64,000 nt of DNA. It comes from Macrostomum lignano (lineage: Eukaryota). The translations under genes were made by a program, and so were the position numbers. The first letter of the stretch is position 1, and every line of letters starts with the position of its first letter. The stretch spans positions 392,512 through 456,511 of the forward strand of contig NIVC01000735.1 in assembly GCA_002269645.1 (NCBI GenBank), in the 5' to 3' direction. The notes under the pieces were generated by a model. That model was not told the DNA's origin. It made no database searches and was given only the letters and a program-made list of their open reading frames with translations. Shown piece after piece: positions 27,858 to 50,604 of the stretch.

Positions 27858-27985
27858 CTTCTATATTATACTATATTATACTTCTATATTATACTATATT
27901 ATACTTCTATATTATACTATATTATACTTCTATATTATACTATATTATACTTCTATATTATACTATATTATACTTCTATATTATA
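27858..27985. repeat. 23-bp AT-rich tandem repeat (TATATTATACTATATTATACTTC), about 5 copies
   Basis: Direct reading. Confidence 0.85.
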
Positions 27986-29119
27986 TCTTCTAGAAGATAA
28001 CAGTCCAATTTAGTAATAGCCACTTTGGTAAGCCACTTTGGTAACAAATGACTTATTTCATAGAGAGGATTTCTATGAGGAATGACTTATTTCATTTGTA
28101 ACAGCCATTTTAATAATAGCCACTTTAGTAACAAATGGACATAATAGTATATATTAAGTGATATACTCCAAAAGAATGTGCAAATGAGGTTTTGGAAAGA
28201 ATGACAAAAAAGAATTAGGATATATTCTTGCACACTTCTAGAGATAAAGTGATATAGAAAACTAGGCCTATGTAATGCATATATGCATATGTTTAACTTG
28301 TTCAAAAGATTTTTAACTGCAATATATTTTAATTTCTGGGAGCATCAGATATATAATTAATGACTTTAAAATAATAAGATTTACTTTAAGTTTTCATTTT
28401 TATAATTTTTTTTGCTTTAGTTTCTTTGCTTTCAAATTTTTAGAAAGCAAATGCAAGTTTAAAATAATTATAGTATAGTTTAACTTAAAAATGCAATTGT
28501 ATTTGGCAATAATTTTTATATATTAAACTACTAAGTACTAAAGTTAATAGTAGTATTATTATTTTAGTATAATGGATCTTATTATCAATTATAATATTGT
28601 GCTACATTGCACTTTTTTATATTTGTCTATAAATTGATTATAACTTCTATAATAGGCCTATAACAAACAATTTAGCTGCTAGGCCCCTATAGTTCAAGTG
28701 ACATATACACTGAGATTTCCCAGTATAGGCCTACAAGGGTATTTGCCATTTTCAATGTATATCAGCATATATCCCAATGTGTATAACATAGTAAAAATAT
28801 TCAGCTTAGATCTATGGTATATTTATATATGTTAGGATCAAATAAAGTGACTAAAGTTATATTATAGAAGGGCTTATGCTATTCTCAGAAATTTTTCGCA
28901 AAATTAAATTCTCGCCAAAATAACAACTATTGTATTATTTGTTTTAATGCACAATTTTGTTTTACCAAATAATCTTTGTTTTAATGATGCACATAATTTG
29001 TTTTAGTTTACTGATTTTTTTAATGCACAATATGTGAGCCAATAGAATAAGACATTGTTGGATAGAATTAAGAGTATTTTGTCAAAGCAGAAATTTTCAG
29101 TCAAGCATTGTGCCCAATA

Positions 29120-29262
29120 AAAAGGTGGAATACCCAGTAAAAGGGTGGAATACCCAGTAAAAGGGTGGAATACCCAGTATAGAGGGTGAAATACCCAGTA
29201 TAGAGGGTGGAATACCCAGTATAGAGGGTGGAATACCCAGTGTAAAGGTTGGATTACCCAGG
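29120..29262. repeat. 20-bp minisatellite (GGGTGGAATACCCAGTA[A/T]A[A/G]A), about 7 copies
   Basis: Direct reading. Confidence 0.85.
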
Positions 29263-29774
29263 AAAGGAGAATTTTCAGGCTGCTCCAGATTAGCGTGATG
29301 CAGTTCTAAGTTGTGAGAGACAGTACTTAAGAAGCCAGAAACCCCTTTGTCTGTGGTAAATGTGGTGTCTAGACTGGATAATTGTAGGAATTTAGCAGTA
29401 GTCAGCAGTGTCTTGCCGCTCGGGCACTGAAGCTACCAAGGGTAATTCGTAGCAACAATAGCCCATAATGTAAAAGTACATGTAAGTATAGAAATAGGAT
29501 TCTTAGAAATAGCAAACTTAGCAGATTTAGTACAGTTCAGTGATTAAACTTTAGAATTAAATAGAGAGAGCTTTTTTGTCTTTTCTCAATGCACATTGCA
29601 AAAGTGCATAATTTTAGTTTGCTAGGCCTACTTTTCTCTATATGAATAACAAATTCAAGAATGAAAAAAGTGTACAACTTTGGCATACAAAGTTTAAAAC
29701 ATTTTGTGGCAATCTTCTAGTTTTGCACATTTAATTATTTTAAAGCATTTTTTATTATTTTCAGCAAAGCAATC

Positions 29775-30120
29775 ATGGCTGGGTGCCCTGCAGCACCAAC
29801 AACTATTGTTCCAGTCCCAGACCTATAACTTGCTGCTGATCTATGCAACCTGAACCCCTTGATGCATGAGTTTAATTAAATTACAGCTACAAATGATGCA
29901 CTGATCCACTGGCTAGCCAGGTACCACCTGCTACTAGCCAATAAACATTGCTGTGCCAATTGTCCTGGGCAGCCATCCATGCAGCTGCAGATATAGGAAG
30001 GCAACTGCTTTATCAACTGCTGCTGCTAGGCTTGCCCACAATGCCGGACACAGGCCTCAATCTAAGGGAACATCCTTTTCTGGGTGGCACACTATTATGC
30101 CGTCTGATCTGAGGCATAAA
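29775..30120 (+). pseudogene. Decayed Merlin/ISXO2-like transposase N-terminal fragment
   Basis: Translation from ATG 29775 gives ...ALIHWLARYHLLLANKHCCANCPGQPSMQL...*ACPQCRTQASI, then after a frameshift KGTSFSGWH. This matches the W-L...C-x2-C...M-x-L...W-x-C-x2-C...S-I-R-K-G-S-F pattern of Merlin transposases as recalled. Five in-frame stops. Confidence 0.5.
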
Positions 30121-30510
30121 ACATAAAACAAAACTGTCGTTAACTGTCATTTTAAAAACAGTTAGAATTAAATGTGCAAAACTAGAAGATTGCCCATTTT
30201 TTGTCCTAGCATACAAATGTGGTCTTGCATTTTTCCCTTACTGGACCTGGCGACTGGCATACATTAGTACATTATTTGAACTATGCCTAGTAGACCCTAG
30301 TCTTAGTATATAATAAAATATTCATTTATTCATTTTTTGGGGCTCTAAAATTAGAAATCAATACAATTCAAGCAAAAAAATTTAACAAACAATTCTATAT
30401 GACAGTAGGCTTATGCCTATATAGACTACTTTGTCTATTACTAGAATAGAATGACAGAACTGTTATTACCAACTGTTCAGCTAATACCATATTTAAATGC
30501 CAATAAAATT

Positions 30511-30603
30511 GGGCATAGTTCTAGTTTACTTTGTTATATTCCAACCCCCCTACCCTTGAATAGAGGGCGAAATAATTTAATGCAGTAAACTAGAACTATG
30601 CCA
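30511..30603. repeat. Short inverted repeat (GCATAGTTCTAGTTTAC ... GTAAACTAGAACTATGC)
   Basis: 17-bp perfect arms around a spacer of about 55 bp. Confidence 0.6.
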
Positions 30604-32076
30604 AAAATTGTCATCATTCTCTAGATTCTAGGACCCACTCTTGTTGCTGTTGCAGGCCTACAACACATACATGGGTACTAACTCGCGGCAAATCGTCTTT
30701 ATAAACTTCTATTTCGAAAACTTTTCCAAATACATAGCTCTATAATATATTGGCCAAACAGGCTAATTGCCTGAGCCAAATTCTCTTACTACTCTCTTAC
30801 TACTTACAGAAGTGTTATGTAACAACAATATTTTAACGTTAGAGTTGAAACGCAAGCTAGCTAACCGATCGAATAGTTTTGTCAAACTCTGAAAGCCATT
30901 CTCTTTAGGCCCTACTCCAATCAGATTGTAAAAGAAATATCATAGGGTTGAAACGCTTAAAACTTATGAAAGTAAAAGTAAATATGAAATAGTCAAATAG
31001 TAGTCATAGAAAAGACTACTAGACTAGATTAGAATGCTAGTCATTAATTAGCATTGCCACAACCCCCATTTATTTCTAAATAATTTTGCGTTTCACAATT
31101 ATCTTTTAACCAAATATAATAATTAGAGCTCTACTACATGAATAGTAGTTCTGATGTAGTTCTGATAAAGCTCGCAATAAATTTAAAAAAATGCAAATAA
31201 AATTTTGTTTTACTGTTTCGGTGTTTCTAAACAAAGTTTATGACTTAAAAACATGTACATGCCTAGAAAAACAGTTTCCGTTATATTCAAAATACCAAAA
31301 CAAAATAAAATTTTATTTACTTATCAGACACTTCTAAAATAATCTATGATGAAACTTCTTGCAAACATAATTTTAAAAAGTGACGTGCAAGCATGAACAC
31401 ATCACCAGTATGATATAATTTAGTCGTTTTATTCACTTAGTCATAGTGTTTTGTACTCTTTACTTTGCATTTTCTATATACTATAAATATCTCAATCGAA
31501 AGCAAATGATTACCCAAAACTCTGTGTTCATTGCGCTACTTTCGTTACTTACTTCCCTTTCATTAAATCTCCCATTTTGTGAATTCTTGTGAATTATTCA
31601 TAATCATAACCTGTTTTTGATTTCCTATTTAAATTAATGACAGCTGGTAGCTTCTGGTGCTATTAGCCTTGAACTTGGCTATCTTTTGTATGCTGACTGT
31701 GTACACTTCATGTTGAACCTGAAAATTTTATATGCCAAGTGTTATGCCAAGATTGTTAGTGAAAGCAAAAATACACTGGAAAGTTCTGGCATAAAAGCCA
31801 CTTTCCAGTCCATGGCTTCCAGCTCCAGCAAAAATTGTCATATTCGATATTGTCATATGTGGGTAACAAGAAAAACAACTAAATTATCTAAATTGTCATC
31901 GTCTCTGCATTTAGACAATGCTGGATTCACTAAATTGTCATATTATATTTATGTTTCATTGTTTGTGCAAGGATCTTGGCTCTCATAGTGGCAACATGTT
32001 CTTGTTTGATAAATGATTTTCAACTTTAAATTATATTTATACCATCTGCTTAAAAGATGCAAAGCCTTGGACTAAT

Positions 32077-32647
32077 GGTTTCAACCTACTTCGGCGAAAT
32101 AATTTTCGGCAAAAGTCAATAATGGCAAAAAATACTTTCATAATGAGCATTTTGTTTAAAGCTGACCATTTTGGTGAAAAAATTTATTCTAAGCTTTGCT
32201 GAGAAGTTTTTTGTTTTAGAAGTAAGTTAAAAAAATGATAAACTTTAAAGAGACTAATTTCATCTAAACATGTTTTTGTTTTGTCGCAGTTTAATTTAGT
32301 TGTTTTATTAGATGCCCTTCCATTATGGCGGAATTTCAAAGTACAATTTTAGGAGCCTGGGATTTAATCTGAAAAACCACACCATCATCATCCCTAATCT
32401 ATCAATTGCATATTGATAGATTGCATGTACATAACATAACTACAAGCTAAGTCATGAGTTTTTTAATTTTCTAACTGCAAATAATGAACAATTTATTAAA
32501 AGCTTCAATCACCAAAGTGGTATATTTGCAATATATACGTAGCCCATCTTTTTGCCGAACTGGTCACTTTCTTTTACCTAAATGTACATCTATTGAAACT
32601 TAAAATTCACTTTTGCTGAAGCGTCTTTTGCCGAAATGGGCTACACC
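32077..32647. mobile_element. Non-autonomous DNA transposon (Mutator-like by TSD length), copy 2, 571 bp
   Basis: 9-bp TSD TGGACTAAT at 32068-32076 and 32648-32656. Same termini and internal sequence as 26831-27431. Confidence 0.85.
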
Positions 32648-34276
32648 TGGACTAATTCCCATATTAAAGTTAATAGTCTAGCTGAACTTAAGGTTTAACC
32701 ATAGAATACTGAGCTAATATTAACAGAGTATTCTTTGGGTTTAAATAGGAATTAATAATAGAAAGATTATGTTTTAATAGTTTGATAGCTTTATAATTAG
32801 AAGCAGATTTATTTTTAAGCTTTATTTAAAATATTATTTCTTAGCTGTTGTAAAAATTTGCTTTTAATTTATTCTAGTGTCCTATGTTATTTTGTTTAAC
32901 TTTGTTTTAATTCTAAGAAATTTGATAAATTTGTCATATTTAAATGATAAAGTCTTAGGGATTGGCTAAGTTGTCATCATCATATGACAATTTAGAATAT
33001 AACAATTTTGATCATACCCTTGCTTCCTCTTTGCACTTTGTCTCATAAAAGGGTGCGCAGCATAAAAGGGATACAAGTATAAGACAAGAAGCAGTTAGAC
33101 TATGTATAGAAGATAAAGACTAAAGGCCTAGTACCTAACAATATATTAATCAAGATATAAGTAAATAGCTTTTAAAATCCAGAAATACTATATTCATATA
33201 AATATAAACATGTATAAATAGTAGTATCTATTTAACTACATGAATAACAAATTGGCTTTTTGTCCAGTATAATAAACTAGACAAATAGTGAAATATCTAT
33301 TTATCTAAGAACCAGAAAAATAACCATATTGCTTTGTCTGGTAACTAGACAAATAACAATTGCCAAACTTAATATATATTTTATGCAAAAGATTAGTTAA
33401 AATGAAAAAAAGGTTTACTTTTTTAGATTTTTGTTATATTTACTTTGCATTTAAAGATTTTGAAATTAAATTGGAATTAAATTCTTTTGCTTTTATAACT
33501 AATTAAAACTATAAATGAGATCCTTGTCATTGATTTTGTGTTTATCTAACTTTCTTAGCATGCGTGCTTTGTATTATAGCCTTGTATATAGCAAATTTTA
33601 TTTTTTTCAAATAGATTATTCAAAATAAAAATAGCATGCCAGTTTTAAAAATAAATAATACTTTTTAAGGTAAAGAAAAAGTGTTGTAAAGCTTCATTAA
33701 ATTATTATTAAAATCATGGAAACCTTAAGCATAAAGTCATTATAAAAATAAAAGCAACACAATAAAAAATTTTTTTAATTCTTCACTATGTATTTGCATC
33801 ATTAGTAATTAGTTATATCTGATATTTTGTTGCCCCTAGTCAAGAAACAAATTTAATATGATTTTTGTCTATTATGAAAAATGTCAATTTGTTCATTCAT
33901 GGTTTTATTGTACGCCTTAATTTTTTTATTGTAACATTGTATGTTTGCATGGCATTAATAGATAGCAATTTATTTATTTTCAGTTGCAATTTGACTTGTT
34001 CAAAATCAATAATGGAAATATGTAAGTCAAATGACACTTTATTTTCAAGATACTAATAATTAAAAAAATGTATTTGATCTCAATATTGACTATGGTCTTC
34101 ACAGATATTTAATGTTTATTATTTTTCCCCACTTGCCAATGCATTTTAGTGCAGCAAGCTGTTACAAATTACTGCAAACTTGACAAAAAGTTGGACTCCT
34201 GTACAACTATGTAAGTACTAACATGGTCAGGCTGTCACCTGTGCTATTGTCTTGTCTATGCAGGCCACTTCCATAG

Positions 34277-37200
34277 GACTCACCAATTCTTGCACTTTGC
34301 AGCTCTGAGCTGTATGATCGAATTGGCGGCACTGAGCTGGGCGCCTCCCTGCTGTGCACCGCCAATCCCGAGCAGCAGCTGCAGGTCACTCACTGGGTTC
34401 GCTACTCCCTGCTCCACCTGCGCCAGCGGCCTGACCTGCTGGCCTCTGCGCTGGCCCACGCCACCTACCTGGTGGGCGGCAGCCTCAGCCTGGCCGACCT
34501 GGCTGTCTGGGCGCAGCTCAGCTGCTGTCCGCGCTGGCAGGCCGCCAGGAAAGCCGGCGCCGCTCAGGCTGAGATCGAGCGGCACTTCCGGCTGATTGGC
34601 GCCGAGGTTGGCGACGCTGTTGGCGCGCTGAAAGCCCCAGCGACTGCGGCACCGGGCGATAGCGGCGCCGCTGGCATGAAGTTCGAGGAGGGCGGCAAAT
34701 TCCGCGACCTCTCTGGTGCCGTGCACGGCGAGGTGGTGGTTCGATTCCCGCCCGAGGCCAGCGGCTACCTGCACGTCGGCCATGCCAAAGCCGCGCTGTT
34801 GAATCAGCATTACAGGAACAGCTGCGGCGGCCGTCTCATCATGCGATTTGATGACACTAATCCGGCCAAGGAGACTGCCGAGTTTGAGCAGGTTAGAATG
34901 CCAGTTTCGCGTGTCCCAGTGTCTCTAACGTACCATTTGGCAGCTGCATGCTGAAGTACTCAGGGTAGGTAGATGCACTTCTAAAGTACTTAAGGCAGGT
35001 ACATTTGGATGCACTTCTTAAGTACTCGGGCCCCGTTTCTGTGCTGTAATTGGTCCATACCCCAATGGTGCTATTTCTAAAATCCACGGTACCAATGTGT
35101 AATTTGGAGTATTGGAGTCTCTAGTTTTTCAGTGCGACGCGACTGCTTCCCTCAGGTAATCCTAGAGGACGTGGCCGCCCTGGGCATCACCTACGATCAT
35201 TTCTCGCACACGTCCGACCACTTCGACCGGATGATGCAGCTGTGCGAGCGAATGCTGCGCGAAGGCAAGGCTTTTGTTGACGACACGGACCCAGAGGCCA
35301 TGAAGGCCGAGCGGGAGAAGCGGGTGGAATCCCGCAATAGAAACAATTGTGAGTGTAAAGCTTTACCTTAGCTATAATACTACTGGCTTCAGTAGTCAGT
35401 TTGGTTTATTTCACTGAACTCCGACTCCATCTCCCCTGGTCAGCCGTGGAGCAGAACATGCGCCTGTGGGAGGAGATGAAGGCCGGCACTCCGCTGGGCT
35501 GTCGGTGCTGCGTGCGCGCCAAAATTGACATGCAATCGGACAATGGCTGCATGCGCGATCCCACCATCTACAGGTGCAAAAATGAGCCGCATCTGCGCAC
35601 CGGTACTAAGTACAAGTGAGTGCTGTTGGAGTAGCAATAAGTAAATCTGCTGAATTTATGACAATCCAGCATCAGTAACTGACTTTTCTAACCGTCATTG
35701 AAGAGTCTACCCGACCTACGACTTTGCCTGCCCGATTGTGGACTCGCTGGAGGGCGTCACGCACGCCCTGCGCACCCTGGAGTACAAGGACCGCGATGCC
35801 CAGTACAATTGGTTCATTGACGCGCTGGGTGAGCTGACACAGCTGACCTACTTGATCACTACTTGCACCAAATGTGAAACATTAGTCACTGAGATTTCTT
35901 GTCGGTCTTTCTGTTTTTGAAGGTCTTCGCCGGCCCCTGCTAGAGGAGTTCAGCCGACTGGCCCTGCAGAACACGGTGCTGAGCAAGCGCAAGCTCACCT
36001 GGTTCGTGAACGAAGGCCTGGTGGACGGCTGGGACGATCCCCGATTCCCCACCGTGCGGGGCATCCTCCGGCGTGGCATGACGCTCGAGGGCCTGCGGCA
36101 GTTCATCCTGGCCCAGGGATTCGCCAAATCCAACGCCACCATGGAGTGGGACAAGATCTGGGCGTTCAACAAGAAGGTGATCGACCCGGTGGCGCCCAGG
36201 TACACGGCGCTGTTCAAGAAAGAGGCTGTGCCGGTCCGAGTGACCAACTTTGACCGCGCCGAGCCCTACAGCTCCAAGGCGAGTCCTAGGTTTATTATTG
36301 TTTTAGCATGACGAAGTTTTGTTCTTTAGAATGCTTTTTTAGTTTTTTACGCAGCGTCCGTGCAAATTAATAATCAGCCGCTCCACCTTGCAGGTTGCGC
36401 TGCACCCAAAGAACGCGGACGTCGGCACTAAAACGATGTGGCACTGGCGCGAATTGCTCATTGAAGGCGCCGACGCACAGACTCTGCACGAAGGCGAGCT
36501 GGTCACCTTCATCAACTGGGGCAACCTCTGCGTTACCCGCCTGGTCCGCGCGCCAGACGGCCGAGTCACAGAGGTTGAGGCTGAGCTTCGGTTGGACAAC
36601 ACAGACTACAAGAAGACGCTGAAGGTCACGTGGCTGGCAAACCTGCCCGCCAACCTGGTGCCCGCCGTGTGCGTCCACTACGATCACATCATCAGCAAGC
36701 CGCTGGTGGGCAAGGACGAGGACTTCCGGCAGTTTGTGAACCGGAACTCCAAGAGACAGGAGCTGATGCTGGGTGATGAAGGACTGGCCAACCTCCGCAA
36801 AGGCGACATCATCCAGCTTCAGCGGCGCGGCTTCTTCATCTGCGATGAACCAGCAGGCGAGAGCGCGTACTCGGGCTGCGCCATGCCCTGCTACCTCATT
36901 GCCGTGCCCGACGGCCACCAGAAGGAGATGCCCACTTCCGGGTCCAAGCACAAGGAGGCTCCGGCCGGCCAGGAGGCCAAGGCAAGCACCGGCGGCCGCG
37001 TCTCCTCGAAGGGCGCGGCAGGCAAGGCGGCCTCAAAGAAGGCCTCGTCACCGCCGGCCGTGACAGCAACGGTTAATGGCGGCGGTCCAGGACCAGACGC
37101 TAGAAGCCTTGACCTGCTGCGGCAGATTGAGGCGCAGGGCAACCTAGTGCGCGAGATGAAGGCCGCGAAAGCTGACAACGTGAGGATAATTAGAATGATT

Positions 37201-40200
37201 CATAAATTCTCCATTGTAAACTAGCCATGCGTTTTGGCCTTGCAGATTCACGCGTGTCGCTATCAGCATCTCTCTAACCTTCTCTTTTTGATTAAATACA
37301 GAATGCTGTACAAGTCGAGTTGAAAAAACTGCTGCAGCTCAAGGCGGACTTCAAGTCTCACAGCGGCCAGGACTGGAAGCCCGACCTGCTGCAGAAAGCC
37401 TCAGCTGCCGACCCAGCAACCGCAGCGGCGCCGCCTCCTCAGGGCTCGGGGCTGCAGCAGTTCAAGCCGCTGCTGGAGAAAATCGCAGCACAAGGCGATC
37501 TGGTCAGGGATCTGAAGGCGAAGAAGGCGGACCAGGTGAGCTGCGTGAGCCTGTTTGAGTAGGGAATTGAGCTGACCAGAGTGATGAACTCACAGTTGCA
37601 CTGAGACAGCGCAGTGATGCAAGTCATCTGTGTGCACTCTAATTTTTTTCTGATGCTGGTCGCTCCATCACTTGCAGCAGGCATTCAATTTGTCAATTTA
37701 GTTGGGTAACTGGGTGTGTTGCTATGGGATACTCTGTAACTGGGTGTGTTGCTGTGGTAGACTCGGTAACTGGGTGTGTTGCTGTGGCAGACTCGGTAAC
37801 TGGGTGTGTTGCTGTGGGATACTCGGTAACTGGGTGTGTTGCTGTGGTAGACTCGGTAACTGGGTGTGTTGCTGTGGGGGATACTCGGTAACTGGGTGTG
37901 TTGCTGTGGGATACTCGGTAACTGGGTGTGTTGCTGTGGCATACTCGGTAACTGGGTGTGTTGCTGTGGCAGACTCGGTAACTGGGTGTGTTGCTGTGGG
38001 ATACTCGGTAACTGGGTGTGTTGCTGTGGGATACTCGGTAACTGAGTGTGTTGCTGTGGGATACTCGGTAACTGGGTGTGTTGCTGTGGGATACTCGGTA
38101 ACTGGGTGTGTTGCTGTGGTAGACTCGGTAACTGGGTGTGTTGCTGTGGGATACTCGGTAACTGGGTGTGTTGCTGTGGTAGACTCGGTAACTGGGTGTG
38201 TTGCTGTGGGGGATACTCGGTAACTCGGTGTGTTGCTGTGGGATACTCGGTAACTGGGTGTCTTGCTGTGGTAGACTCGGTAACTGGGTGTGTTGCTGTG
38301 GGATACTCGGTAACTGGGTGTGTTGCTGTGGTAGACTCGCTAACTGGGTGTGTTGCTGTGGGATACTCGGTAACTGGGTGTGTTGCTGTGGTAGACTCGG
38401 TAACTGGGTGTGTTGCTGTGGGATACTCGGTAACTGGGTGTGTTGCTGTGGTAGACTCGGTAACTGGGTGTGTTGCTGTGGGGGATACTCGGTAACTGGG
38501 TGTGTTGCTGTGGGATACTCGGTAACTGGGTGTGTTGCTGTGGGGGATACTCGGTAACTGGGTGTGTTGCTGTGGTAGACTCGGTAACTGGGTGTGTTGC
38601 TGTGGGATACTCGGTAACTGGGTGTGTTGCTGTGGTAGACTCGGTAACTGGGTGTGTTGCTGTGGGATACTCGGTAACTGGGTGTGTTGCTGTGGGATAC
38701 TCGGTAACTGGGTGTGTTACTGTGGGGGATACTCGGTAACTGGGTGTGTTGCTGTGGTAGACTCGGTAACTGGGTGTGTTGCTGTGGTAGACTCGGTAAC
38801 TGGGTGTGTTGCTGTGGGATACTCGGTAACTGGGTGTGTTGCTGTGGGGGATACTCGGTAACTGGGTGTGTTGCTGTGGGATACTCGGTAACTGGGTGTG
38901 TTGCTGTGGGATACTCGGTAACTGGGTGTGTTGCTGTGGTAGACTCGGTATCTAGGTGTGGTGCTTCAATGGCTTAAAGTATAACTTGCTCAATTCCGAA
39001 TGCAATGATGACTCAAAGTCGCACTGATTACACATCTGTAATGATGTCAATCTACCTTTAATTTTACTGAAGCATTCGGACTCGTCGGTTCGAATTCAGA
39101 AAAGTGAACACTGTCGCATTTTTCTTAGAGACGGTCGGCTGTGCGCACACTGGCTGCATTTCAAGCGACATGCCATATTTTCACAATCGGCGAGATTCAT
39201 TACTGCCCATTCTGCCGACTTCTGTGCAGGCACACACTCACATAGGGGTGCACAGCGGCCCTAAATTTGTTTATCGATTGGCATGTTTACTTCACTGTGC
39301 TTTGGGGGTTGGCCATCAAGTGCGTTAATCGCACGAGCAGACCTAAGCCGAGATTGCAATTTAGAGCTTAGAATCGAGTCTGAGCCGCTGGCACATCAAA
39401 GCGCCGCGCTAGGCCCATCAGTGCAGCCGCTCCCCCAACCTCACTGTGAACCTTCAGGCCGCAATCAAGTCGGCAGTGGACCAGCTGCTGCAGCTCAAGG
39501 CGGACTTCAAGTCTCACAGCGGTCAGGACTGGAAGCCCGAACTGCTGCAGAAGGCCACCCCTGCCGCCCCAGCTGCCGCCCCAGCAACCGCAGCGGCGCC
39601 GCCTCCTCAGGGCTCGGGGCTGCAGCAGTTCAAGCCGCTGCTGGAGAAAATCGCAGCACAAGGCGATTTGGTCAGGGACCTGAAGGCAAAGAAGGCGGAC
39701 CAGGTGAGCTGCGTGAGCCTGTTTGAGTAGGGAATTGAGCTGACCAGAGTGATGAACTCACAGTTGCACTGAGACAGCGCAGTGATGCAAGTCATCTGTG
39801 TGCACTCTAATTTTTTTCTGATGCTGGTCGCTCTTCTGTTTCTATCGTGCTTTGCTATACTTCAGTTCTGAAGTCGAGTTCTGTAGGTCTTTAATTTAGG
39901 TTTCTAGCCGATTATCCGGTTCAGCCGAGTGCAGCAGCTACTTCCACGCCGTTTTGCACTGAAGCATTTGAGAATTCAGAGCCACATGCTCTGACAATGC
40001 GCTCGTATAGAGAGCTCAATTAGTTTGAATGGCGCGTGAGCATCAGAGCCACATGCTCTGACAATGCGCTCGTATAGAGAGCTCAATTAGTTTGAATGGC
40101 GCGTGAGCATCAGAGCCACATGCTCTGACAATGCGCTCGTATAGAGAGCTCAATTAGTTTGAATGGCGCGTGAGCATCAGAGCCACATGCTCTGACAATG

Positions 40201-41769
40201 CGCTCGTATAGAGAGCTCAATTAGTTTGAATGGCGCGTGAGCATCAGAGCCACATGCTCTGACAATGCGCTCGTATAGAGAGCTCAATTAGTTTGAATGG
40301 CGCGTGAGCATCAGAGCCACATGCTCTGACAATGCGCTCGTATAGAGAGCTCAATTAGTTTGAATGGCGCGTGAGCATCAGAGCCACATGCTCTGACAAT
40401 GCGCTCGTATAGAGAGCTCAATTAGTTTGAATGGCGCGTGAGCATCAGAGCCACATGCTCTGACAATGCGCTCGTATAGAGAGCTCAATTAGTTTGAATG
40501 GCGCGTGAGCATCAGAGCCACATGCTCTGACAATGCGCTCGTATAGAGAGCTCAATTAGTTTGAATGGCGCGTGAGCATCAGAGCCACATGCTCTGACAA
40601 TGCGCTCGTATAGAGAGCTCAATTAGTTTGAATGGCGCGTGAGCATCAGAGCCACATGCTCTGACAATGCGCTCGTATAGAGAGCTCAATTAGTTTGAAT
40701 GGCGCGTGAGCATCGTGGACCTCGAAGTCGTTTGGTGCCATCAAATTTATCTGGGGCATGCATTTCTGCTCCTATTGCTGAAGCTGTTCCACCAGATGCT
40801 GATATCCAGAGTTGTAAAGCTGCAAGGGGAACATGAGCTCAGGATTACCAGAGTATCGCTGAATTCCCGGCGATCCGCAGCCGTCGCCATAGTTATATCC
40901 GTCACAACCTTTGTAATTGCCGCATTAAAAGCTCATTCCCAGTTTGTAGCTCCACGGCTGTTGCATTTCGTCGTCTGACCCAGGTGTTTGGTGTGGGCAA
41001 TGCACAATTCGAAGAAAGATCATTCACATTCATTGTCTGCACGCTGATTTACCGTAGTCTATGGTGAAATATATGTTAAGCCATCAATTTTTTGTGCACT
41101 CTAATTTTTTTCTGATGCTGGTCGCTCCATCACTTGCAGCAAGCATTCAATTCGTCAATTTAACTGGGTGTGTTGCTATGGCATACTCGGTAACTGGGTG
41201 TGTTGCTATGGCAGACTCGGTAACTGGGTGTGTTGCTATGGGATACTATGGGATATGGGATATCACTTGCTCAATTCCGAATGCAATGATGACTCAAAGT
41301 CGCACTGATTACACTTTGTAATGACGTCAATCTACCAATGAACACTCTAATTTTTTGCTGATGCATTCGGATTGGGTTGAAAAGTGATTGGTTAAAAGTG
41401 GGACTTGACAATTCCATTCCAGCTGGTCATTGATCCATCCATCTCCGCTATCCTCAGGCGGCGGTGAAGCCTGCTGTTGATCAGTTGCTGGCGCTGAAGG
41501 CGGAGTTCAAGGCCCAGTCCGGCATGGACCACAAGCCGGACCTCATCAAGCAGCTGGACCAGCAACTGCAGGCAGCAGGCGCTTCCGTCGGCCTGGACCA
41601 GCTGCGGCAGATCAAGGCGGCCGGAGACCGGGTGCGCGCAATGAAGGAGTCCGGCGCTGGCAAGGCGGAACTGCAGCCGGCCCTGGACCAGCTGATGCAG
41701 GCGAAGGCGCAGTTCAAGCAGGCCACGGGCAAAGAGTACAAGCCGGAGATGCTGAAGACTCTGACTTGA
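34277..41769 (+). CDS. EPRS: Cytoplasmic glutamyl-tRNA synthetase (GST-like N-terminus, class I catalytic core, anticodon-binding domain, 4 WHEP repeats), the GluRS half of EPRS. Exons about 34277-34891, 35156-35348, 35444-35615, 35704-35828, 35923-36278, 36394-37179, 37302-37535, 39458-39703 and 41458-41769 (stop). The start-codon exon was not located.
   Basis: [16 protein letters not shown] (GST-like); [24 protein letters not shown] (HIGH); RFDDTNP; [23 protein letters not shown]; VLSKR (KMSKS); [12 protein letters not shown]; [13 protein letters not shown]. All junctions are phase-consistent. It ends [15 protein letters not shown]. Confidence 0.93.
37706..38950. repeat. 30-33-bp intronic minisatellite (ACTCGGTAACTGGGTGTGTTGCTGTGGGAT), about 40 copies
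   Basis: Direct reading. A 2-3-unit relic of the same repeat lies at about 41160-41240. Confidence 0.95.
39834..41092. mobile_element. Insertion of about 1.26 kb flanked by a 35-bp direct duplication
   Basis: TGTGCACTCTAATTTTTTTCTGATGCTGGTCGCTC occurs at about 39799-39833 and 41093-41127. The paralogous intron (37630-37700) has this sequence once, uninterrupted. Confidence 0.7.
39978..40714. repeat. 67-bp tandem repeat, 11 apparently identical copies
   Basis: Unit AGAGCCACATGCTCTGACAATGCGCTCGTATAGAGAGCTCAATTAGTTTGAATGGCGCGTGAGCATC; 737 bp = 11 x 67. Confidence 0.95.
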
Positions 41770-42295
41770 ATCAACGGGTTTATGAAATCGCCGCATGCTC
41801 AGCATCTCATTAATTCTATTCTTTAGTAAATTACGAGTGCTCTGCAAGCCGATGGCAACATTGAAGCTTTGTGATCTATCTTTCGCTGGTCTGTCTGATG
41901 TTGGTGTGACTGCCGTGTATGAGTGAGGTTATGGTATATCCAAAATTTACAATTAGTAAAGCAAGTTCAATAAGCACCAATGCTATGTTGTCAGTAGTGT
42001 CAGTTTTTCATGATTTTGCTTTTTCCCATGCGTTTTTTCTTTTCCCCTATTATTTGCCCTTTGACCTTTCTGTCCTGCTCGCATTCTTCCGCCCGAGTCG
42101 AGGGTTTCATTTGATCCTGCGCATCAACAGCGAAGCAAATCAAATACAGACTGAGAGAGATTCAATGTAACTGCTTTACCTGCCTGACCTGTTTGACTGG
42201 ATTCACTTGTATGCGACTTTTTCTTTTGGAGCTTTAAAGTTTATTCTAAACTTTGGGAATTTCCTTCCAATTACTGACTCTGTGCTACTGTCCGC

Positions 42296-42870
42296 CTCAC
42301 CTTCTCTCATCTATCTCTCTTCTCTCCTCTGACTCCCCTTCTCCCATCACTGACTCTCCCCTTCTCTCATCACTGACTCTCCCCTTCTCTCATCACTGCC
42401 TCTCCCTTCTCTCATCACTGACCATCCCCTTCTCTCATCACTGACTCCCCTTCTCTCATCACTGACTCTTCTCTTCTCTCATCACTGACTCTCCCCTTTT
42501 CTCATCACTGACTCTCCCCTTCTCTCATCACTGCCTCTCCCCTTCTCTCATCACTGACTCCCCTTCTCTCATCACTGACTCTTCTCTTCTCTCATCACTG
42601 ACTCTCCCTTTCTCTCATTACTGACTCCCCTTCTCTCATCACTGACCCTCCCCTTCTCTCATCACTGCCTCTCCCCTTCTCTCATCACTGACTCTCCCCT
42701 TCTCTCATCACTGACTCCCCTTCTCTCATCACTGCCTCTCCCCTTCTCTCATCACTGACTCTCCCCTTCTCTCATCACTGACTCTCCCCTTCTCTCATCA
42801 CTGACTCTCCCCTTCTCTCATCACTGACCCTCCCCTTCTCTCATCACTGACTCTCCCTTCTCTCATCACC
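42296..42870. repeat. About 21-23-bp pyrimidine-rich minisatellite (CTTCTCTCATCACTGACTCTCCC) in the GluRS-ProRS spacer
   Basis: Direct reading; about 25 variant units. Confidence 0.9.
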
Positions 42871-43025
42871 GACTCTCCTCATTGCCATTCTTCATTCCAT
42901 CTCTTAAAAGCCCAGCTAACTTTTCTAAATAGTTTTGATTTTGCTCACTAGAGGCATCCGAGTGCAAGTCTCTGACACTACTAACAGTAGTACCCGAATC
43001 GCCCCATGCCGGTGGCAGACGCGGA

Positions 43026-46000
43026 ATGGCTGACGCGGACGCGATTAAGAGTGAAATCGACCAGCTGGGAGACAAGATTCGCGGCTTGAAGGCTGGCGGA
43101 GCCGACAAGTCTGTGGTGGACATTGAGGTGGCCGCACTAAAGGAGCTGAAGCAGCGCTACAAAGACCTCACTGGGGTTGAACTGGCCGGCGGCCGGCCAA
43201 ACAAGAAGACCAAGGAGACTGCAAAGCCCCCGCCAGTCCAGGACGACCAGGACGATGCGGGCCGGAAGCACCAGACTCGGCTGGGCATGGAGGCTAGCAA
43301 GGCGGACAACCTGGCCGACTGGTACTCGCAGGTGAGTTCACTGTTGTGACTCACTGACAGCTGCCCCTGAGAATCGCCCATCGAATCGCCCCTGAGAATC
43401 GCCCATCAAACCGCCCCTGAGAGTCGCCCACATCAAACCGCCCCTGAGAGTCGCCCCCATCAAACCGCACTAAAGAATGGCCCCATCAAACCGCCCCTGA
43501 GAGTCGCCCCCATCAAACCGCACTAAAGAATGGCCCCCATCAAACCGCCCCTGAGAGTCGCCCCCATCAAACCGCCCCTGAGAGTCGCCCCCATCAAACC
43601 GCCCCTGAGAGTCGCCCCCATCAAACCGCCCCTGAGAGTCGCCCCCATCAGACCGCCCATGAGATTCGCCCCCATCAGACCGCCTTAGAACGCTCATCAA
43701 ACCTCTCTCAATAAAAATCCCACCGCAGGTGATAACAAAGTCGGAGCTCATTGAGTATTACGACATATCGGGATGCTACATCCTGCGCCCTTGGGCCTAC
43801 TCAATCTGGGAGATGGTGCAGCGCTACGTTGACGACCGCATCAAGGGCATGGGCGTGCAGAATGTCTACTTCCCCATGTTCGTGTCGAACGCTGCTCTGG
43901 AGAAGGAGAAGACCCACATCACCGACTTCGCTCCCGAGGTTGCATGGGTGACGCGAAGCGGCCGGTCCGACCTGGCCGAGCCCATCGCCATCCGGCCAAC
44001 CTCCGAGACCGTCATGTACCCGTCATTTGCCAAGTGGATCCAGAGCTACAGGGACCTGCCGCTCAAGGTTAACCAGTGGAACAACGTTGTCAGGTGGGAG
44101 TTCAAGCACCCGCAGCCGTTCCTGCGCACCAGGGAGTTCCTCTGGCACGAGGGCCACACGGCGTTTGCCACGCGAGAGGAGGCGGAGGTGGAGGTGAGCA
44201 ATTACCGAATGCTGGCGAACACATTTGAGAAAATTTGAACACCTGAGTAACATTATGTGGGATTTTTATTTGGGATCTAGGATTGGAGATCTGGGATCGG
44301 AGATCTGGGATCGGAGATCTGGGATCGGAGATCTGGGATCGGAGATCTGGGATCGGAGATCTGGGATCGGAGATCTGGGATCGGAGATCTGGGATCGGAG
44401 ATCTGGGATCGGAGATCTGGGATCGGAGATCTGGGATCGGAGATCTGGGATCGGAGATCTGGGATCGGAGATCTGGGATCGGAGATCTGGGATCGGAGAT
44501 CTGGGATCGGAGATCTGGGATCGGAGATCTGGGATCGGAGATCTGGGATCGGAGATCTGGGATCGGAGATCTGGGATCGGAGATCTGGGATCGGAGATCT
44601 GGGATCGGAGATCTGGGATCGGAGATCTGGGATCGGAGATCTGGGATCGGAGATCTGGGATCGGAGATCTGGGATCGGAGATCTGGGATCGGAGATCTGG
44701 GATCGGAGATCTGGGATCGGAGATCTGGGATCGGAGATCTGGGATCGGAGATCTGGGATCGGAGATCTGGGATCGGAGATCTGGGATCGGAGATCTGGGA
44801 TCGGAGATCTGGGATCGGAGATCTGGGATCGGAGATCTGGGATCGGAGATCTGGGATCGGAGATCTGGGATCGGAGATCTGGGATCGGAGATCTGGGATC
44901 GGAGATCTGGGATCGGAGATCTGGGATCGGAGATCTGGGACCTCATTAACGCAACCAGCCCGCCGCTGCCGTCCGCCCAGGTGATGGAGATCCTGGCCAT
45001 GTACGAATACGTGTACGAGAACCTGATGGCCGTCCCGGTCATCAAGGGCCGCAAGACCGAAAAGGAGAAGTTCGCCGGCGGCGACTACACCACCACCGTG
45101 GAGGTGTACATCGGCGCCAGCGGTCGCGCAATCCAGGGCGCCACCAGCCACCACCTGGGCCAGAACTTCTCCCAAATGTTCGACATCGTGTTCGAGGACC
45201 CGGCCACCGGCGAGAAGCGCCACGTACACCAGAACTCCTGGGCCATCACCACCCGGTCCATTGGCGTCATGGTGATGGTCCACGGCGACGACAAAGGCCT
45301 GGTGCTGCCACCCCGCCTGGCCGCCCACCAGCTGGTGCTGGTGCCCTGCGGCCTCACCGTGCGCACAACCGAGGAGGCGAAGCGCGCCCTGCTGGACAAG
45401 TGCAATTCGCTAGCTGCCGAGCTGCGCGCCTGCGGCCTGCGGGTGCATGCGGACCTGCGAGAGCACTACTCGCCCGGCTGGAAGTTCAACCACTGGGAGC
45501 TCAAGGGAGTCCCAGTCAGGATCGAAGTTGGGCCAAGGGACATGGCGGCCAAGCAGGTGCGTTCGCTGCTTCTTTTACATGTACTAACCCATCAATCTCT
45601 CCTCCTAATTACCCATCCCAATCTCATCCATCGCAATCTCACCCCATCTCAATCTCACCCCATCTCAATCTCACCCATCTCAATCTCACCCCATCCTAAT
45701 CTCACCCCATCCCAATCTCATCCCAATCTCACCTATCCGTCCTAATCTCACCCATCCAAATCTCATCCATCCCAATCTGATCATCCCAATCTCACCCATC
45801 CAAATATCATCCATCCCAATCTCACCCCACCCCAATCTCATCCATCCCAATCTCACCCATCTCAATCTCACCCATCCGTTCTAATCTCACCCATCCAAAT
45901 ATCATCCATCCCAATCTCACCCCACCCCAATCTCATCCATCTCAATCTCACCCATCCGTTCTAATCTCACCCATCCCAATCTTATCCATCCCAATCTTAC

Positions 46001-46443
46001 CCTGACCCGAACCCGCACTCTCCATACCGAAGGTGGTGGCGGCCATCCGGTACTCCGGTGAGAAGCGCACCCTGCCAGAGGAGGGCCTGGCCGCCAGTCT
46101 GCAGGCCCTGCTGGACTCGGTGCAGTCCGAGATGTTCGCCCGCGCCAAGGCGGAGCAGGACGCGCGCCTGTCCGTGTGCCCGGACCTGGCCTCCCTGTGC
46201 GCCGCACTGGACAAGCAGCACCTCATCCTGGCGCCATTCTGCGGCGACCCCGACTGCGAGGACCTCATCAAGAAGGACAGCGCGCGCAACGCCATTGTAG
46301 AAGAGGGCGCCCCGTCCATGGGCGCCAAGAGTTTGTGCATCCCCTTCAACCAGCCGGACGAGATCGGGCCGGACACAAAGTGCGTGCATTCCCATTGCGG
46401 CCGCAAGCCCCAATTCTACACCCTTTTCGGCCGCAGCTACTGA
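43026..46443 (+). CDS. EPRS: Cytoplasmic prolyl-tRNA synthetase with one N-terminal WHEP domain, the ProRS half of EPRS. Exons 43026-43331, 43729-44193, 44981-45556, 46033-46443.
   Basis: [44 protein letters not shown]; [10 protein letters not shown]; DWYSQ|[22 protein letters not shown]; [12 protein letters not shown]; [28 protein letters not shown]; [13 protein letters not shown]; [26 protein letters not shown]; C-terminal Zn-site cysteines and FGRSY*. All introns are phase 0 GT-AG. Confidence 0.95.
43365..43685. repeat. About 27-bp intronic minisatellite (CGCCCCTGAGAGTCGCCCCCATCAAAC)
   Basis: Direct reading, ProRS intron 1. Confidence 0.9.
44281..44940. repeat. Perfect 14-bp intronic tandem repeat (CTGGGATCGGAGAT), about 47 copies
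   Basis: Direct reading, ProRS intron 2. It has no stop in any frame, which produces the long spurious ORFs. Confidence 0.97.
45590..46005. repeat. Degenerate 14-15-bp intronic repeat (AATCTCACCC[C]ATCC)
   Basis: Direct reading, ProRS intron 3. Confidence 0.9.
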
Positions 46444-47382: not shown

Positions 47383-48440
47383 ACAGCTCAGGAAACAGCT
47401 GTGGGTAGCGAGTGATCTGCTCAGGGAACAGGTGGCTAGCGGGTGTCTGCTCAGGTAACAGCTGTTGATCTGCTCAGGGAACAGGTGGCTAGCGGGTGTC
47501 TGCTCAGGTAACAGCTGTTGATCTGCTCAGGGAACAGGTGGCTAGCGGGTGTCTGCTCAGGTAACAGCTGTTGATCTGCTCAGGGAACAGCTGTGGGTAG
47601 CGGGTGATCTGCTCAGGGAACAGGTGGCTAGCGGGTGTCTGCTCAGGTAACAGCTGTTGATCTGCTCAGGGAACAGCTGTGGGTAGCGGGTGATCTGCTC
47701 AGGGAACAGGTGGCTAGCGGGTGTCTGCTCAGGGAACAGGTGGGTAGCGGGTGATCTGCTCAGGGAACAGGTGGGTAGCGGGTGAGCTTCTCAGGGAACA
47801 GGTGGCTAGCGAGTGATCTGCTCAGGGAACAGCTGAGTAGCGGGTGATCTGCTCAGGGAACAGGTGGCTAGCGGGTGATCTGCTCAGGGAACAGGTGGGT
47901 AGCGGGTGAGCTTTTTTAGGGAACAGGTGGCTAGCGAGTGATCTGCTCAGGGAACAGCTGAGTAGCGGTTGATCTTCTCAGGGAACAGGTGGCTAGCGGG
48001 TGTCTGCTCAGGTAACAGCTGTTGATCTGCTCAGGGAACAGGTGGCTAGCGGGTGATCTTCTCAGGTAACAGCTGTTGATCTGCTCAGGGAACAGGTGGC
48101 TAGCGGGTGATCTTCTCAGGTAACAGCTGTTGATCTGCTCAGGGAACAGGTGGCTAGCGGGTGATCTGCTCAGGTAACAGCTGTTGATCTGCTCAGGGAA
48201 CAGCTGTGGGTAGCGGGTGATCTGCTCAGGTAACAGCTGTTGATCTGCTCAGGGAACAGGTGGCTAGCGGGTTCTGCTCAGGTAACAGCTGTTGATCTGC
48301 TCAGGGAACAGGTGGCTAGCGGGTGATCTGCTCAGGTAACAGCTGTTGATCTGCTCAGGGAACAGGTGGCTAGCGGGTGATCTGCTCAGGTAACAGCTGA
48401 TCTGCTCAGGAAACAGGTGGGCAGCGGGGGATCTGATCAG
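47383..48440. repeat. Composite minisatellite built from 22-31-bp subunits (GATCTGCTCAGGGAACAGGTGGCTAGCGGGT / CTGCTCAGGTAACAGCTGTT)
   Basis: Direct reading; interleaved subunit types form higher-order repeats. Confidence 0.9.

Positions 48441-48999: not shown

Positions 49000-50604
<1,605 letters not shown>

What the first reader, a model, noticed from the sequence alone, without database searches (positions are those of the whole stretch)
34277..46443. EPRS split in place: GluRS-(WHEP)4-STOP followed by a separately initiated WHEP-ProRS, possibly a trans-spliced dicistron or an alternative-terminal-exon switch
Seen in sequence: the fourth-WHEP exon (41458-) ends [15 protein letters not shown] at 41767-41769, with no convincing splice donor before the stop. 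Poly(A)-like hexamers (AGTAAA 41955, AATAAG 41969) and a T-rich tract follow. ProRS starts 1.26 kb later at a strong-context ATG (43026) with its own WHEP. About 75 nt upstream is a pyrimidine-rich acceptor, TTTTGATTTTGCTCACTAG|AG| (42951/42953). The frame from 42954 to the ATG is open but has UTR-like codons (CTA CTA ACA GTA GTA). Established: most animals encode one fused EPRS; nematodes such as C. elegans have separate genes with WHEPs on both halves; Drosophila makes a ProRS-only mRNA from an internal promoter; several flatworms use SL trans-splicing. Inference, three models. (a) Fission with the halves still adjacent. (b) One pre-mRNA resolved by polyadenylation plus SL trans-splicing at 42951-42953. 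(c) Skipping the stop-containing exon from the phase-0 donor at 39703 or 37535 to the phase-0 acceptor at 42954, which regenerates a fused EPRS, so the locus could toggle between fused and split enzymes.
Basis: partly seen in the sequence, partly recalled or inferred. Interest (0 to 1): 0.85.

Follow-up and report, generated by a model that had tools for sequence, protein, structure and literature searches.

The report
Flatworm EPRS split into adjacent genes
In the flatworm Macrostomum lignano, the glutamyl-prolyl tRNA synthetase that most animals make as one fused protein is encoded by two neighbouring genes; GenBank already annotates them separately, so this is a second lineage with the split, not a switchable locus.

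Summary
The window is Macrostomum lignano. An 11-exon GluRS gene with four WHEP domains ends at a genomic TGA (41767-41769). A four-exon WHEP-ProRS gene starts 1,256 nt downstream at ATG 43026. My exon models match GenBank PAA77577.1 and PAA77578.1 exactly; these come from a transcript-guided annotation and are two separate genes. A second, diverged genomic copy keeps the same TGA, so it is not a consensus error.

The fused/split toggle is not supported. No usable splice donor precedes the stop. The only in-frame acceptor (42953|42954) is a GAG lying 2 nt after a TAG. The 24 codons before the ATG do not look coding (GC3 0.46 against 0.79-0.86 in the real exons). A fused 1,507-aa UniProt model exists, but it uses a very weak donor and carries two other clear mis-splices.

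How ProRS is transcribed remains open: own promoter or an SL-resolved operon. The annotated GluRS 5' end sits exactly behind a canonical spliced-leader acceptor. The ProRS 5' end does not, which mildly favours an independent start.

This is a new lineage for a known kind of event. The papers I found report EPRS fission only for Rhabditina nematodes. Here the halves are still adjacent. Interest is moderate.

The parts
33978..33983 (+). Probable spliced-leader trans-splice acceptor of GluRS (TTTCAG|)
   Evidence: It is an exact match to the published M. lignano trans-splice acceptor motif [T/C]TNCAG. The annotated 5'-partial CDS of PAA77577.1 begins at the first full codon, 33985, 1 nt after this AG. 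That SL is actually added here is inference.
34012..41769 (+). GluRS-(WHEP)4 gene. CDS exons: 34012-34021, 34150-34210, 34303-34891, 35156-35348, 35444-35615, 35704-35828, 35923-36278 (GC donor), 36394-37179, 37302-37535, 39458-39703, 41458-41769. Product 1,027 aa.
   Evidence: The spliced translation is contained exactly in GenBank PAA77577.1 (P0241). Pfam finds tRNA-synt_1c, its two C-terminal anticodon-binding domains, and 4 WHEP-TRS stretches.
37302..39703 (+). Recent tandem duplication of a phase-0/0 WHEP exon (37302-37535 and 39458-39703) together with the start of its downstream intron
   Evidence: The two exons are near-identical and share the donor context CAG|gtgagctgcgtgagcctgtttgagtaggga. 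The homeologous copy L001 carries a third intact copy of this exon.
41767..41769 (+). Genomically encoded TGA stop that ends GluRS after the fourth WHEP
   Evidence: Read directly. The stop is conserved in the diverged copy L001 (KALA-TGA against KTLT-TGA), while the flanking sequence differs.
41770..43025 (+). 1,256-nt spacer. It should contain the GluRS 3' UTR with PAS-like hexamers (41825, 41955, 41969), a T-rich tract, a 23-nt tandem repeat (42333-42878), and the ProRS upstream region and 5' UTR.
   Evidence: Against L001, 41770-41919 is about 84% identical, 41920-42319 is 98.5% identical, and 42860-43025 matches at 165 of 166 positions. No Rfam family or tRNA was found.
42940..42953 (+).
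   Evidence: It is present. TAG| (exon starting at 42952) is out of frame with the ATG. GAG| (exon starting at 42954) is in frame. There is no evidence that either is used.
43006..43008 (+). Out-of-frame upstream ATG in weak context. The annotated ProRS transcript starts just after it, at 43009-43011.
   Evidence: The 5'-partial CDS of PAA77578.1 starts with GGRRG, which is position 43011.
43026..46443 (+). WHEP-ProRS gene. CDS exons: 43026-43331, 43729-44193, 44981-45556, 46033-46443. Product 585 aa.
   Evidence: The spliced translation is contained exactly in GenBank PAA77578.1 (P0243). Pfam finds WHEP-TRS, tRNA-synt_2b, HGTP_anticodon and ProRS-C_1.

Best explanation
The ancestral fused glutamyl-prolyl-tRNA synthetase gene of animals has undergone a complete fission in place in Macrostomum lignano. 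The break lies between the penultimate WHEP domain and the last, ProRS-proximal WHEP domain.

The upstream gene makes a GluRS with four C-terminal WHEP domains. It ends at a genomic TGA, and its mRNA is probably SL trans-spliced at 33983|33984. The downstream gene, 1.26 kb away on the same strand, makes a ProRS with one N-terminal WHEP, translated from its own ATG at 43026. The two enzymes are separate polypeptides, as in Rhabditina nematodes, but the genes have not moved apart.

The ProRS mRNA most likely starts from its own promoter in the roughly 150 nt between the tandem repeat and the ATG (about 0.55-0.6 within this explanation). Such a promoter could descend from the internal ProRS-only start that other protostome EPRS genes have.

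Shown: the gene structures, the stop in two copies, the lack of a usable donor, and the match to a transcript-based annotation. Inferred: the transcription start, the polyadenylation site and the SL status.
For: - The organism is M. lignano, and the ProRS hit is a 590-aa ProRS-only protein.
- My exon models equal PAA77577.1 and PAA77578.1. These come from the Mlig_3_7 annotation, which was built from RNA-seq, a de novo transcriptome, SL-read mapping and poly(A)-site reads.
- The second locus, L001, carries PAA53324/PAA53325 as two genes. It has the same TGA despite an in-frame 6-nt indel, nonsynonymous changes nearby and about 16% divergence just after the stop.
- Every GT in the last GluRS exon scores below the real donors except 41632, which would cut a WHEP helix. 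The donor used by the fused UniProt model scores -4.5, against at least 4.1 (leave-one-out) for the 13 real donors.
- GC3 of 42954-43025 is 0.46, against 0.79 and 0.86 in the two CDSs. That equals the lowest of 67 real 24-codon windows.
- The ProRS WHEP carries the ...LTGxxLAGG ending of the ProRS-proximal WHEP of fused EPRS proteins. The GluRS WHEPs end in ...KP.
- The annotated ProRS 5' end is not behind an AG, whereas the GluRS 5' end is exactly behind TTTCAG|.
- There is no YTNCAG motif in the spacer.
Against: - I could not see any RNA reads. No M. lignano transcript contigs were retrievable.
- The 5'-end argument rests on CDS coordinates of a 5'-partial annotation. That start lies right after CATG, which equals the last 4 nt of the SL, so it may be a trimming artefact and the true 5' end may lie further upstream.
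- UniProt A0A1I8GLS9 models a fused 1,507-aa protein.
[quoted passage not shown] The separate gene models therefore do not prove separate promoters.
- High conservation of the spacer between homeologs may just reflect locally low divergence: the first 4 kb of the locus is 99% identical including introns.
Confidence: 0.78

Rival explanations
1. This is a two-gene operon. GluRS and ProRS are co-transcribed from the GluRS promoter, and the precursor is resolved by cleavage and polyadenylation near 41980-42000 plus SL trans-splicing at an AG between 42910 and 43019. The proteins are still separate, so this is fission by conversion to an operon with no new promoter.
For: - The genes are adjacent on the same strand. 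Flanking genes are on the other strand or far away.
- The stop-to-ATG distance is 1,256 nt, of which 546 nt is tandem repeat. The repeat-adjusted distance is therefore under the 1-kb threshold used to call M. lignano operons.
- The authors of the annotation say that transcriptional units split at repeat-rich operon spacers.
- Candidate acceptors follow a long CT-rich tract.
- A TACTAAC branch-point-like motif lies 34 nt upstream of CAG| at 43018 (read from the sequence).
Against: - The annotated ProRS 5' end (43009-43011) is not preceded by AG, while the TBONE pipeline cuts trans-spliced genes exactly at the acceptor, as seen for GluRS.
- There is no [T/C]TNCAG in the whole spacer, where about 2.6 would be expected from the local density. 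However, only 44% of true sites carry the motif.
- A repeat-adjusted distance of several hundred nt is well above the roughly 100-nt mode for operon spacers.
Confidence: 0.22
2. This is an alternative-splicing toggle. Skipping the stop-containing exon (donor 37535 or 39703 to acceptor 42953|42954), or using the weak donor 41735|41736 with acceptor 43018|43019, regenerates a fused EPRS alongside the split products.
For: - Phase-0 donors and an in-frame AG exist.
- UniProt A0A1I8GLS9 (1,507 aa) models the junction ...QATGKE|RGMADAD....
- In bdelloid rotifers, the equivalent locus keeps a perfect donor at the WHEP midpoint that could skip the ProRS ATG exon. Such dual-output EPRS loci therefore do exist.
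Against: - The in-frame acceptor is a GAG 2 nt downstream of a TAG. Splicing to the TAG gives RHPSASL-stop.
- The junction would leave half a WHEP fused to 24 residues with UTR-like codon usage.
- The donor of the UniProt model scores -4.5.
- That model also drops 12 conserved residues at the GC-AG intron and 77 residues of the ProRS catalytic core, so it is a poor ab initio model (one search compared).
- The transcript-based annotation includes 43011-43018, which lies upstream of that model's acceptor.
- The position homologous to the WHEP intron inside ProRS exon 1 (43109|43110) scores -7.7 as an acceptor.
Confidence: 0.05
3. This is an assembly or consensus error, or one half is a pseudogene. 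The TGA or the missing donor is not real, and the functional gene elsewhere in the genome is fused.
For: M. lignano assemblies are repeat-rich and polyploid. In another species (Solemya velum, L008) an annotated split looks like a 1-nt frameshift artefact.
Against: - Two independently assembled, diverged copies have the same stop and the same 1.2-1.7 kb non-coding spacer.
- Both halves are intact ORFs with all domains and 99% protein identity between copies.
- No fused M. lignano protein other than the flawed ab initio model appeared in the searches.
Confidence: 0.02

Closest known systems
Split GluRS and ProRS of Rhabditina nematodes (C. elegans ERS with six WHEPs and PRS with one WHEP)
   Same: There are two separate genes and proteins. 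WHEP repeats stay on the C-terminus of GluRS and a single WHEP on the N-terminus of ProRS, so the break falls before the last WHEP.
   Different: The event is independent and in a different phylum. In M. lignano the halves are still head-to-tail 1.26 kb apart. In the two nematode ProRS loci I inspected (Steinernema; Toxocara, which is not a Rhabditina species), no GluRS gene is annotated next to ProRS. M. lignano has four WHEPs (possibly five in the homeolog) rather than six.
Fused bifunctional EPRS of most animals (human EPRS1, Drosophila; S. mansoni has a fused EPRS without WHEPs)
   Same: The two catalytic modules are the same, at about 50% and 60% identity, and so are the WHEP linker modules. 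The ProRS-proximal WHEP and the KxxTRLG...NLADWYSQ junction are conserved.
   Different: There is no continuous ORF. A genomic stop, 1.26 kb of non-coding spacer and a new initiator ATG separate the halves.
ProRS-only mRNA from an internal start within EPRS (Drosophila from my own knowledge; insect 'isoform X2' proteins; the bdelloid rotifer loci read here)
   Same: A WHEP-ProRS product starts inside or after the WHEP array. In Adineta and Rotaria an ATG exon lies 135-200 nt after the last GluRS-side WHEP exon.
   Different: In those loci the GluRS side keeps a donor that can skip the ATG exon and make fused EPRS. The M. lignano GluRS side ends in a complete WHEP followed by TGA, with no such donor.
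Human EPRS N1, a truncated GluRS-WHEP form made by coding-region polyadenylation
   Same: It is a GluRS-plus-WHEP protein without ProRS, made from the EPRS locus.
   Different: In human the stop is created on the mRNA by polyadenylation, and it is a minor isoform beside the fused EPRS. In M. lignano the stop is encoded in the DNA and appears to be the only form.
SL-resolved operons of M. lignano (Ustyantsev and Berezikov 2021)
   Same: The genes are adjacent on the same strand, the repeat-adjusted spacing is under 1 kb, and the upstream gene is probably itself trans-spliced.
   Different: Trans-splicing of the downstream gene, which is the defining feature, is not supported by the annotated 5' end or by an acceptor motif.

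Membership tests
Bifunctional (fused) EPRS | One continuous ORF or mRNA joins GluRS and ProRS through WHEP linkers | tested here: not met
   TGA at 41767-69 is present in two diverged copies. No usable donor precedes it. The transcript-based GenBank models are separate.
Class I glutamyl-tRNA synthetase (eukaryotic GluRS/GlnRS type) | tRNA-synt_1c catalytic domain with HIGH-type and KMSKS-type motifs, plus the two C-terminal anticodon-binding domains | tested here: met
   PF00749 E=7e-112, PF03950 and PF20974. HVGH and VLSKRK are visible in the translation.
Class II prolyl-tRNA synthetase (eukaryote/archaeal type) | tRNA-synt_2b core, HGTP anticodon-binding domain and the ProRS-C_1 C-terminal domain ending in ...YTLFGRSY | tested here: met
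   PF00587, PF03129 and PF09180. Identity to animal ProRS modules is 57-68%.
WHEP-TRS domain | A helix-turn-helix of about 50 aa that matches PF00458 | tested here: met
   Four stretches in GluRS (E=8e-68) and one in ProRS (E=1e-13). Alignment.
Nematode-type split ERS/PRS | Separate genes, with WHEPs at the ERS C-terminus and one WHEP at the PRS N-terminus | tested here: met
   Literature description.
Nematode-type split ERS/PRS | Common descent with the nematode fission (same event) | tested here: not met
   Per the papers read, other nematodes (Brugia, Loa, Trichinella) and the flatworm S. mansoni have fused EPRS. The M. lignano event must therefore be independent; this follows from the taxon distribution in those papers.
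M. lignano SL-resolved operon | Adjacent same-strand genes with a repeat-adjusted intergenic distance under 1 kb | tested here: met
   The spacer is 1,256 nt from stop to ATG, minus 546 nt of tandem repeat.
M. lignano SL-resolved operon | The downstream gene's mRNA carries the 35-nt spliced leader at an AG acceptor | tested here: inconclusive
   The annotated 5' end at 43009-43011 is not behind an AG, and no YTNCAG occurs in the spacer. No reads could be inspected, and 56% of true sites lack the motif.
Dual-output EPRS locus (fused form plus ProRS-only form from an internal first exon) | A GluRS-side donor can bypass the ProRS initiator exon in frame | tested here: not met
   The only in-frame route needs a GAG acceptor 2 nt after a TAG and yields half a WHEP. 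Rotifer loci do have such a donor.

The most novel reading that the evidence does not exclude
The pair is a dicistronic operon. The ancestral fused EPRS transcript would still be made from one promoter, but is now cut into two mRNAs by polyadenylation plus SL trans-splicing. This would be a documented case of a fusion protein reverting to two proteins through conversion to an operon. It would suggest that SL trans-splicing lowers the barrier to gene fission; M. lignano uses it, and so do nematodes and, from my own knowledge, rotifers, the other groups where split or splittable EPRS loci are seen.
Probability: 0.22. Interest if true: 0.65.

Novelty: new member of a known kind. Interest (0 to 1): 0.4.

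Why it matters
The EPRS fusion is a textbook example of a stable gene fusion that arose before animals. It is tied to assembly of the multi-synthetase complex and to non-canonical functions of the WHEP linker. The papers I found report reversal of the fusion only for Rhabditina nematodes.

A second, independent fission in a free-living flatworm, caught with both halves still in their original order and spacing, gives a natural intermediate. It shows where the break falls: before the ProRS-proximal WHEP, the same place as in nematodes and as the internal ProRS start of insects and rotifers. It also allows tests of whether ProRS leaves the multi-synthetase complex, as it does in C. elegans.

There is a practical use as well. 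The finding flags the fused UniProt entry A0A1I8GLS9 as probably wrong. It also shows, through the Solemya and rotifer examples, that annotated 'split' EPRS loci need sequence-level checking.

Tried and rejected
- I looked for M. lignano transcript contigs or protein fragments that would show the real mRNA ends. I used a chimeric query made of the GluRS C-terminus plus the ProRS N-terminus. No M. lignano sequences came back, so there is no direct RNA evidence.
- I searched the main text of the library and the supplements of three M. lignano papers for Mlig003030, Mlig003944 and EPRS. Nothing was found.
- I first assumed that the different Mlig prefixes (003944 and 003030) proved different transcriptional units, and that the .gN suffix gave position within a unit. 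I rejected the second assumption: g1, g2 and g3 here denote genomic copies. The authors also state that units break at repeats.
- I considered using high spacer conservation between the homeologs as evidence for a promoter. I rejected this as weak, because nearby introns are equally conserved.
- I tested a cryptic acceptor at the position homologous to the WHEP intron inside ProRS exon 1 (43109|43110). It scores -7.7.
- I checked for an SL RNA gene, other ncRNAs and tRNAs in the window. None were found.
- The splice-site weight matrices come from only 13 introns and are noisy. I use them only for gross contrasts.
Full report
**Identity of the window.** A spliced model of the downstream gene (585 aa) is 99% identical over its full length to 'hypothetical protein BOX15_Mlig003030g1, partial [Macrostomum lignano]'. 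The upstream gene hits BOX15_Mlig003944g1 at 99%. Cluster look-up shows further copies: PAA77577.1 (Mlig003944g2, 1,036 aa) and PAA77578.1 (Mlig003030g3, 590 aa), which sit on one 456-kb scaffold. My translations from the window are contained in these two proteins exactly. The window therefore holds a locus that GenBank assembly GCA_002269645.1 already annotates as two consecutive genes.

**Check of the observation.**
- The last GluRS exon starts at 41458 behind cctcag| and ends ...[15 protein letters not shown], with the stop at 41767-41769.
- ProRS starts at ATG 43026 in the context GCGGAATGG.
- The motif ttttgattttgctcacTAGAG lies at 42934-42953.
- The frame from 42954 to the ATG is open.
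- AGTAAA is at 41955 and AATAAG at 41969.

I added several details.
- GluRS has two tiny AT-rich 5' exons (34012-34021, 34150-34210), so its ATG is at 34012.
- Intron 36279-36393 is a GC-AG intron.
- An out-of-frame upstream ATG lies at 43006.
- A 546-nt array of a 23-nt CT-rich unit (42333-42878) occupies 43% of the 1,256-nt spacer.

Pfam confirms the architectures. GluRS has the tRNA-synt_1c core, two anticodon-binding domains and four WHEP stretches. ProRS has one WHEP, the tRNA-synt_2b core, the HGTP anticodon domain and ProRS-C_1.

**Is the stop real?** A second genomic copy (L001, NIVC01003103.1, carrying PAA53324 and PAA53325) is 92-99% identical in long aligned blocks across the locus. 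In its last GluRS exon it differs from the window by an in-frame 6-nt indel and several substitutions. It ends KALA-TGA instead of KTLT-TGA, with the TGA at the same position. It is then only about 84% identical over the next 150 nt. Its spacer repeat is about twice as long. Two diverged copies that share the stop and a long non-coding spacer rule out a consensus error.

**Can the halves be rejoined by splicing?** The 13 real introns of the two genes have donors GT[GA]AG in 10 cases, plus GCGAGT, GTTAGA and GTGCGT. Their acceptors are CAG (9), AAG (3) and TAG (1).
- Within the last GluRS exon the only GT with a positive donor score is 41632 (CGG|GTGCGC), which lies in the middle of the first helix of WHEP4.
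- The GT nearest the stop (41736, AGA|GTACAA) scores -4.5. The real donors score at least 4.1 in leave-one-out scoring.
It needs a GAG acceptor 2 nt downstream of a TAG. Using the TAG instead gives RHPSASL-stop.
- Even if the GAG were used, the product would carry half a WHEP fused to 24 residues with GC3 of 0.46. The two coding sequences have GC3 of 0.79 and 0.86, and 0.46 equals the lowest of 67 real 24-codon windows.
- The site inside ProRS exon 1 that corresponds to the usual WHEP intron position (43109|43110) scores -7.7 as an acceptor.

One database entry does show a fusion. UniProt A0A1I8GLS9 (1,507 aa) has the junction ...QATGKE|RGMADAD..., which uses donor 41735|41736 and acceptor 43018|43019. 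The same model skips 12 conserved residues at the GC-AG intron and deletes 77 residues of the ProRS catalytic core. The transcript-based models also contain 43011-43018, upstream of that acceptor. I read this entry as a faulty computational gene model, not as evidence for a fused isoform.

**How are the two mRNAs made?** The Mlig_3_7 annotation was built from StringTie/TACO assemblies and a de novo transcriptome. It was then cut at experimentally mapped SL sites and poly(A) sites.
- The 5'-partial GluRS CDS starts at 33985, one nucleotide after ttatttatTTTCAG|. This is an exact match to the published trans-splice acceptor motif [T/C]TNCAG. GluRS is therefore very probably SL trans-spliced.
- The 5'-partial ProRS CDS starts at 43011 in both copies (GGRRG and GGRRE). 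The transcript model therefore starts at 43009-43011, right after ...CCCCATG. No AG precedes it.
- CATG equals the last four bases of the SL (...TTGCATG). I suspect adapter-style trimming removed four genuine 5' UTR bases from a transcript that began near 43005. This is inference.
- Either way the annotation does not place an SL site on ProRS, and the whole spacer lacks YTNCAG.

This favours a separate transcription start close to the ATG, but it does not prove one.
- The pair satisfies the published operon criterion apart from SL status: same strand, adjacent, and under 1 kb after subtracting repeats.
- 45% of conserved genes are trans-spliced.
- The annotators warn that transcriptional units break at repeat-rich operon spacers.

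I put an own promoter at roughly 0.55-0.6 and an operon at roughly 0.2-0.25.

**Comparison with what is known.** Ray and Fox (2014) found unlinked ERS and PRS only in C. elegans. They reported a fused, WHEP-less EPRS in the flatworm Schistosoma mansoni. Havrylenko and Mirande (2015) extend the fission to other Rhabditina and note fused genes in Brugia, Loa, Trichuris and Trichinella. I found no paper that mentions a flatworm fission.

The M. lignano break lies at the same place as in C. elegans. All repeats but the last stay with GluRS. The ProRS WHEP has the ...YKxLTGxxLAGG ending of the ProRS-proximal WHEP of fused enzymes.

Many short WHEP-ProRS proteins in the databases turned out to be a mixed bag.
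- In the bdelloid rotifers Adineta steineri and Rotaria, GluRS coding sequence and WHEP-ProRS are also adjacent, 135-200 nt apart. There, however, the GluRS reading frame runs into a perfect donor (CCAAAA|GTAAGT or |GTGAGT) exactly at the WHEP midpoint. That donor is in the same phase as the donor of the ProRS ATG exon. A fused EPRS that skips that exon is therefore structurally possible. These look like Drosophila-type loci with an internal ProRS first exon.
- In the bivalve Solemya, the annotated split looks like a single-base frameshift.
- In Steinernema and Toxocara, no GluRS gene is annotated next to ProRS.

M. lignano is thus distinctive. It is fully split, like Rhabditina, but still in tandem.

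**Verdict.** Interpretation (a), fission in place, is well supported. Interpretation (b) is open. Interpretation (c) is unlikely. The locus is already annotated as two 'hypothetical proteins', so the sequence fact is not new. Recognising it as an independent EPRS fission, still in tandem, appears to be undescribed in the papers I could search. I class it as a new member of a known kind, with moderate interest (0.4). The most novel reading still allowed is that the fusion reverted through conversion to an operon (probability about 0.22).

Noticed in passing
L001:7190-7424 (homeolog of window 37302-39703): The second genomic copy carries a third intact phase-0/0 WHEP exon, with acceptor ttcag|GCC and donor CAG|gtgagc. 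The GenBank model PAA53324 does not use it. That copy may therefore encode a five-WHEP GluRS, and WHEP exon number differs between homeologs.
   Followed up: partly
window 36279-36393: This is a GC-AG intron (AAG|GCGAGT ... ttgcag|G) in GluRS. The UniProt model A0A1I8GLS9 mis-splices here and loses [12 protein letters not shown].
   Followed up: yes
window 33978-33984: A canonical M. lignano trans-splice acceptor, TTTCAG|, lies exactly at the annotated GluRS 5' end. The ATG that ends the SL would open a 24-codon out-of-frame upstream ORF overlapping the GluRS start.
   Followed up: partly
L005:6700-7160 and L002:9740-10170 (bdelloid rotifers): GluRS and WHEP-ProRS are adjacent, and a perfect donor sits at the WHEP midpoint on the GluRS side. 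AATAAA signals lie just after the annotated Adineta GluRS stop. Elements conserved between Adineta and Rotaria (ACACGTCACC, TAGCGATCTCTACCGA) lie upstream of the ProRS ATG exon and may mark an internal promoter. In Rotaria the GluRS coding region upstream of ProRS has no called gene.
   Followed up: partly
L008:9900-10010 (Solemya velum): The annotated GluRS/ProRS split has an 80-nt gap. Another frame reads straight through as a typical Lys/Ser/Pro-rich linker into the WHEP. This is probably a 1-nt frameshift artefact in a fused EPRS.
   Followed up: partly
window 37705-38965, 39976-40714, 42333-42878, 43363-43684, 44274-44940, 45611-46002, 47413-48000: Every long intron of the pair, the spacer between the genes, and the region downstream of ProRS hold a large minisatellite with units of 14-67 nt. 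The 67-nt array at 39976-40714 has 11 copies at 100% identity. Copy numbers differ between the homeologs.
   Followed up: no
window 42976-42995: The sequence cacTACTAACAGTAGTAccc lies 30-50 nt upstream of the ProRS ATG. It contains a short palindrome (TACTA/TAGTA) and a TACTAAC branch-point-like motif. It could be a promoter element or the branch site for CAG| at 43018.
   Followed up: no
window 4242-6356 (-), 49000-50316 (-), 53817-59041 (-), 26000-34000: The neighbours are a striatin-like WD40 gene, an alpha-tubulin gene and a giant URGCP/GVIN1-like GTPase gene, all on the minus strand. An 8-kb AT-rich block (25-33% GC) lies directly upstream of GluRS.
   Followed up: no
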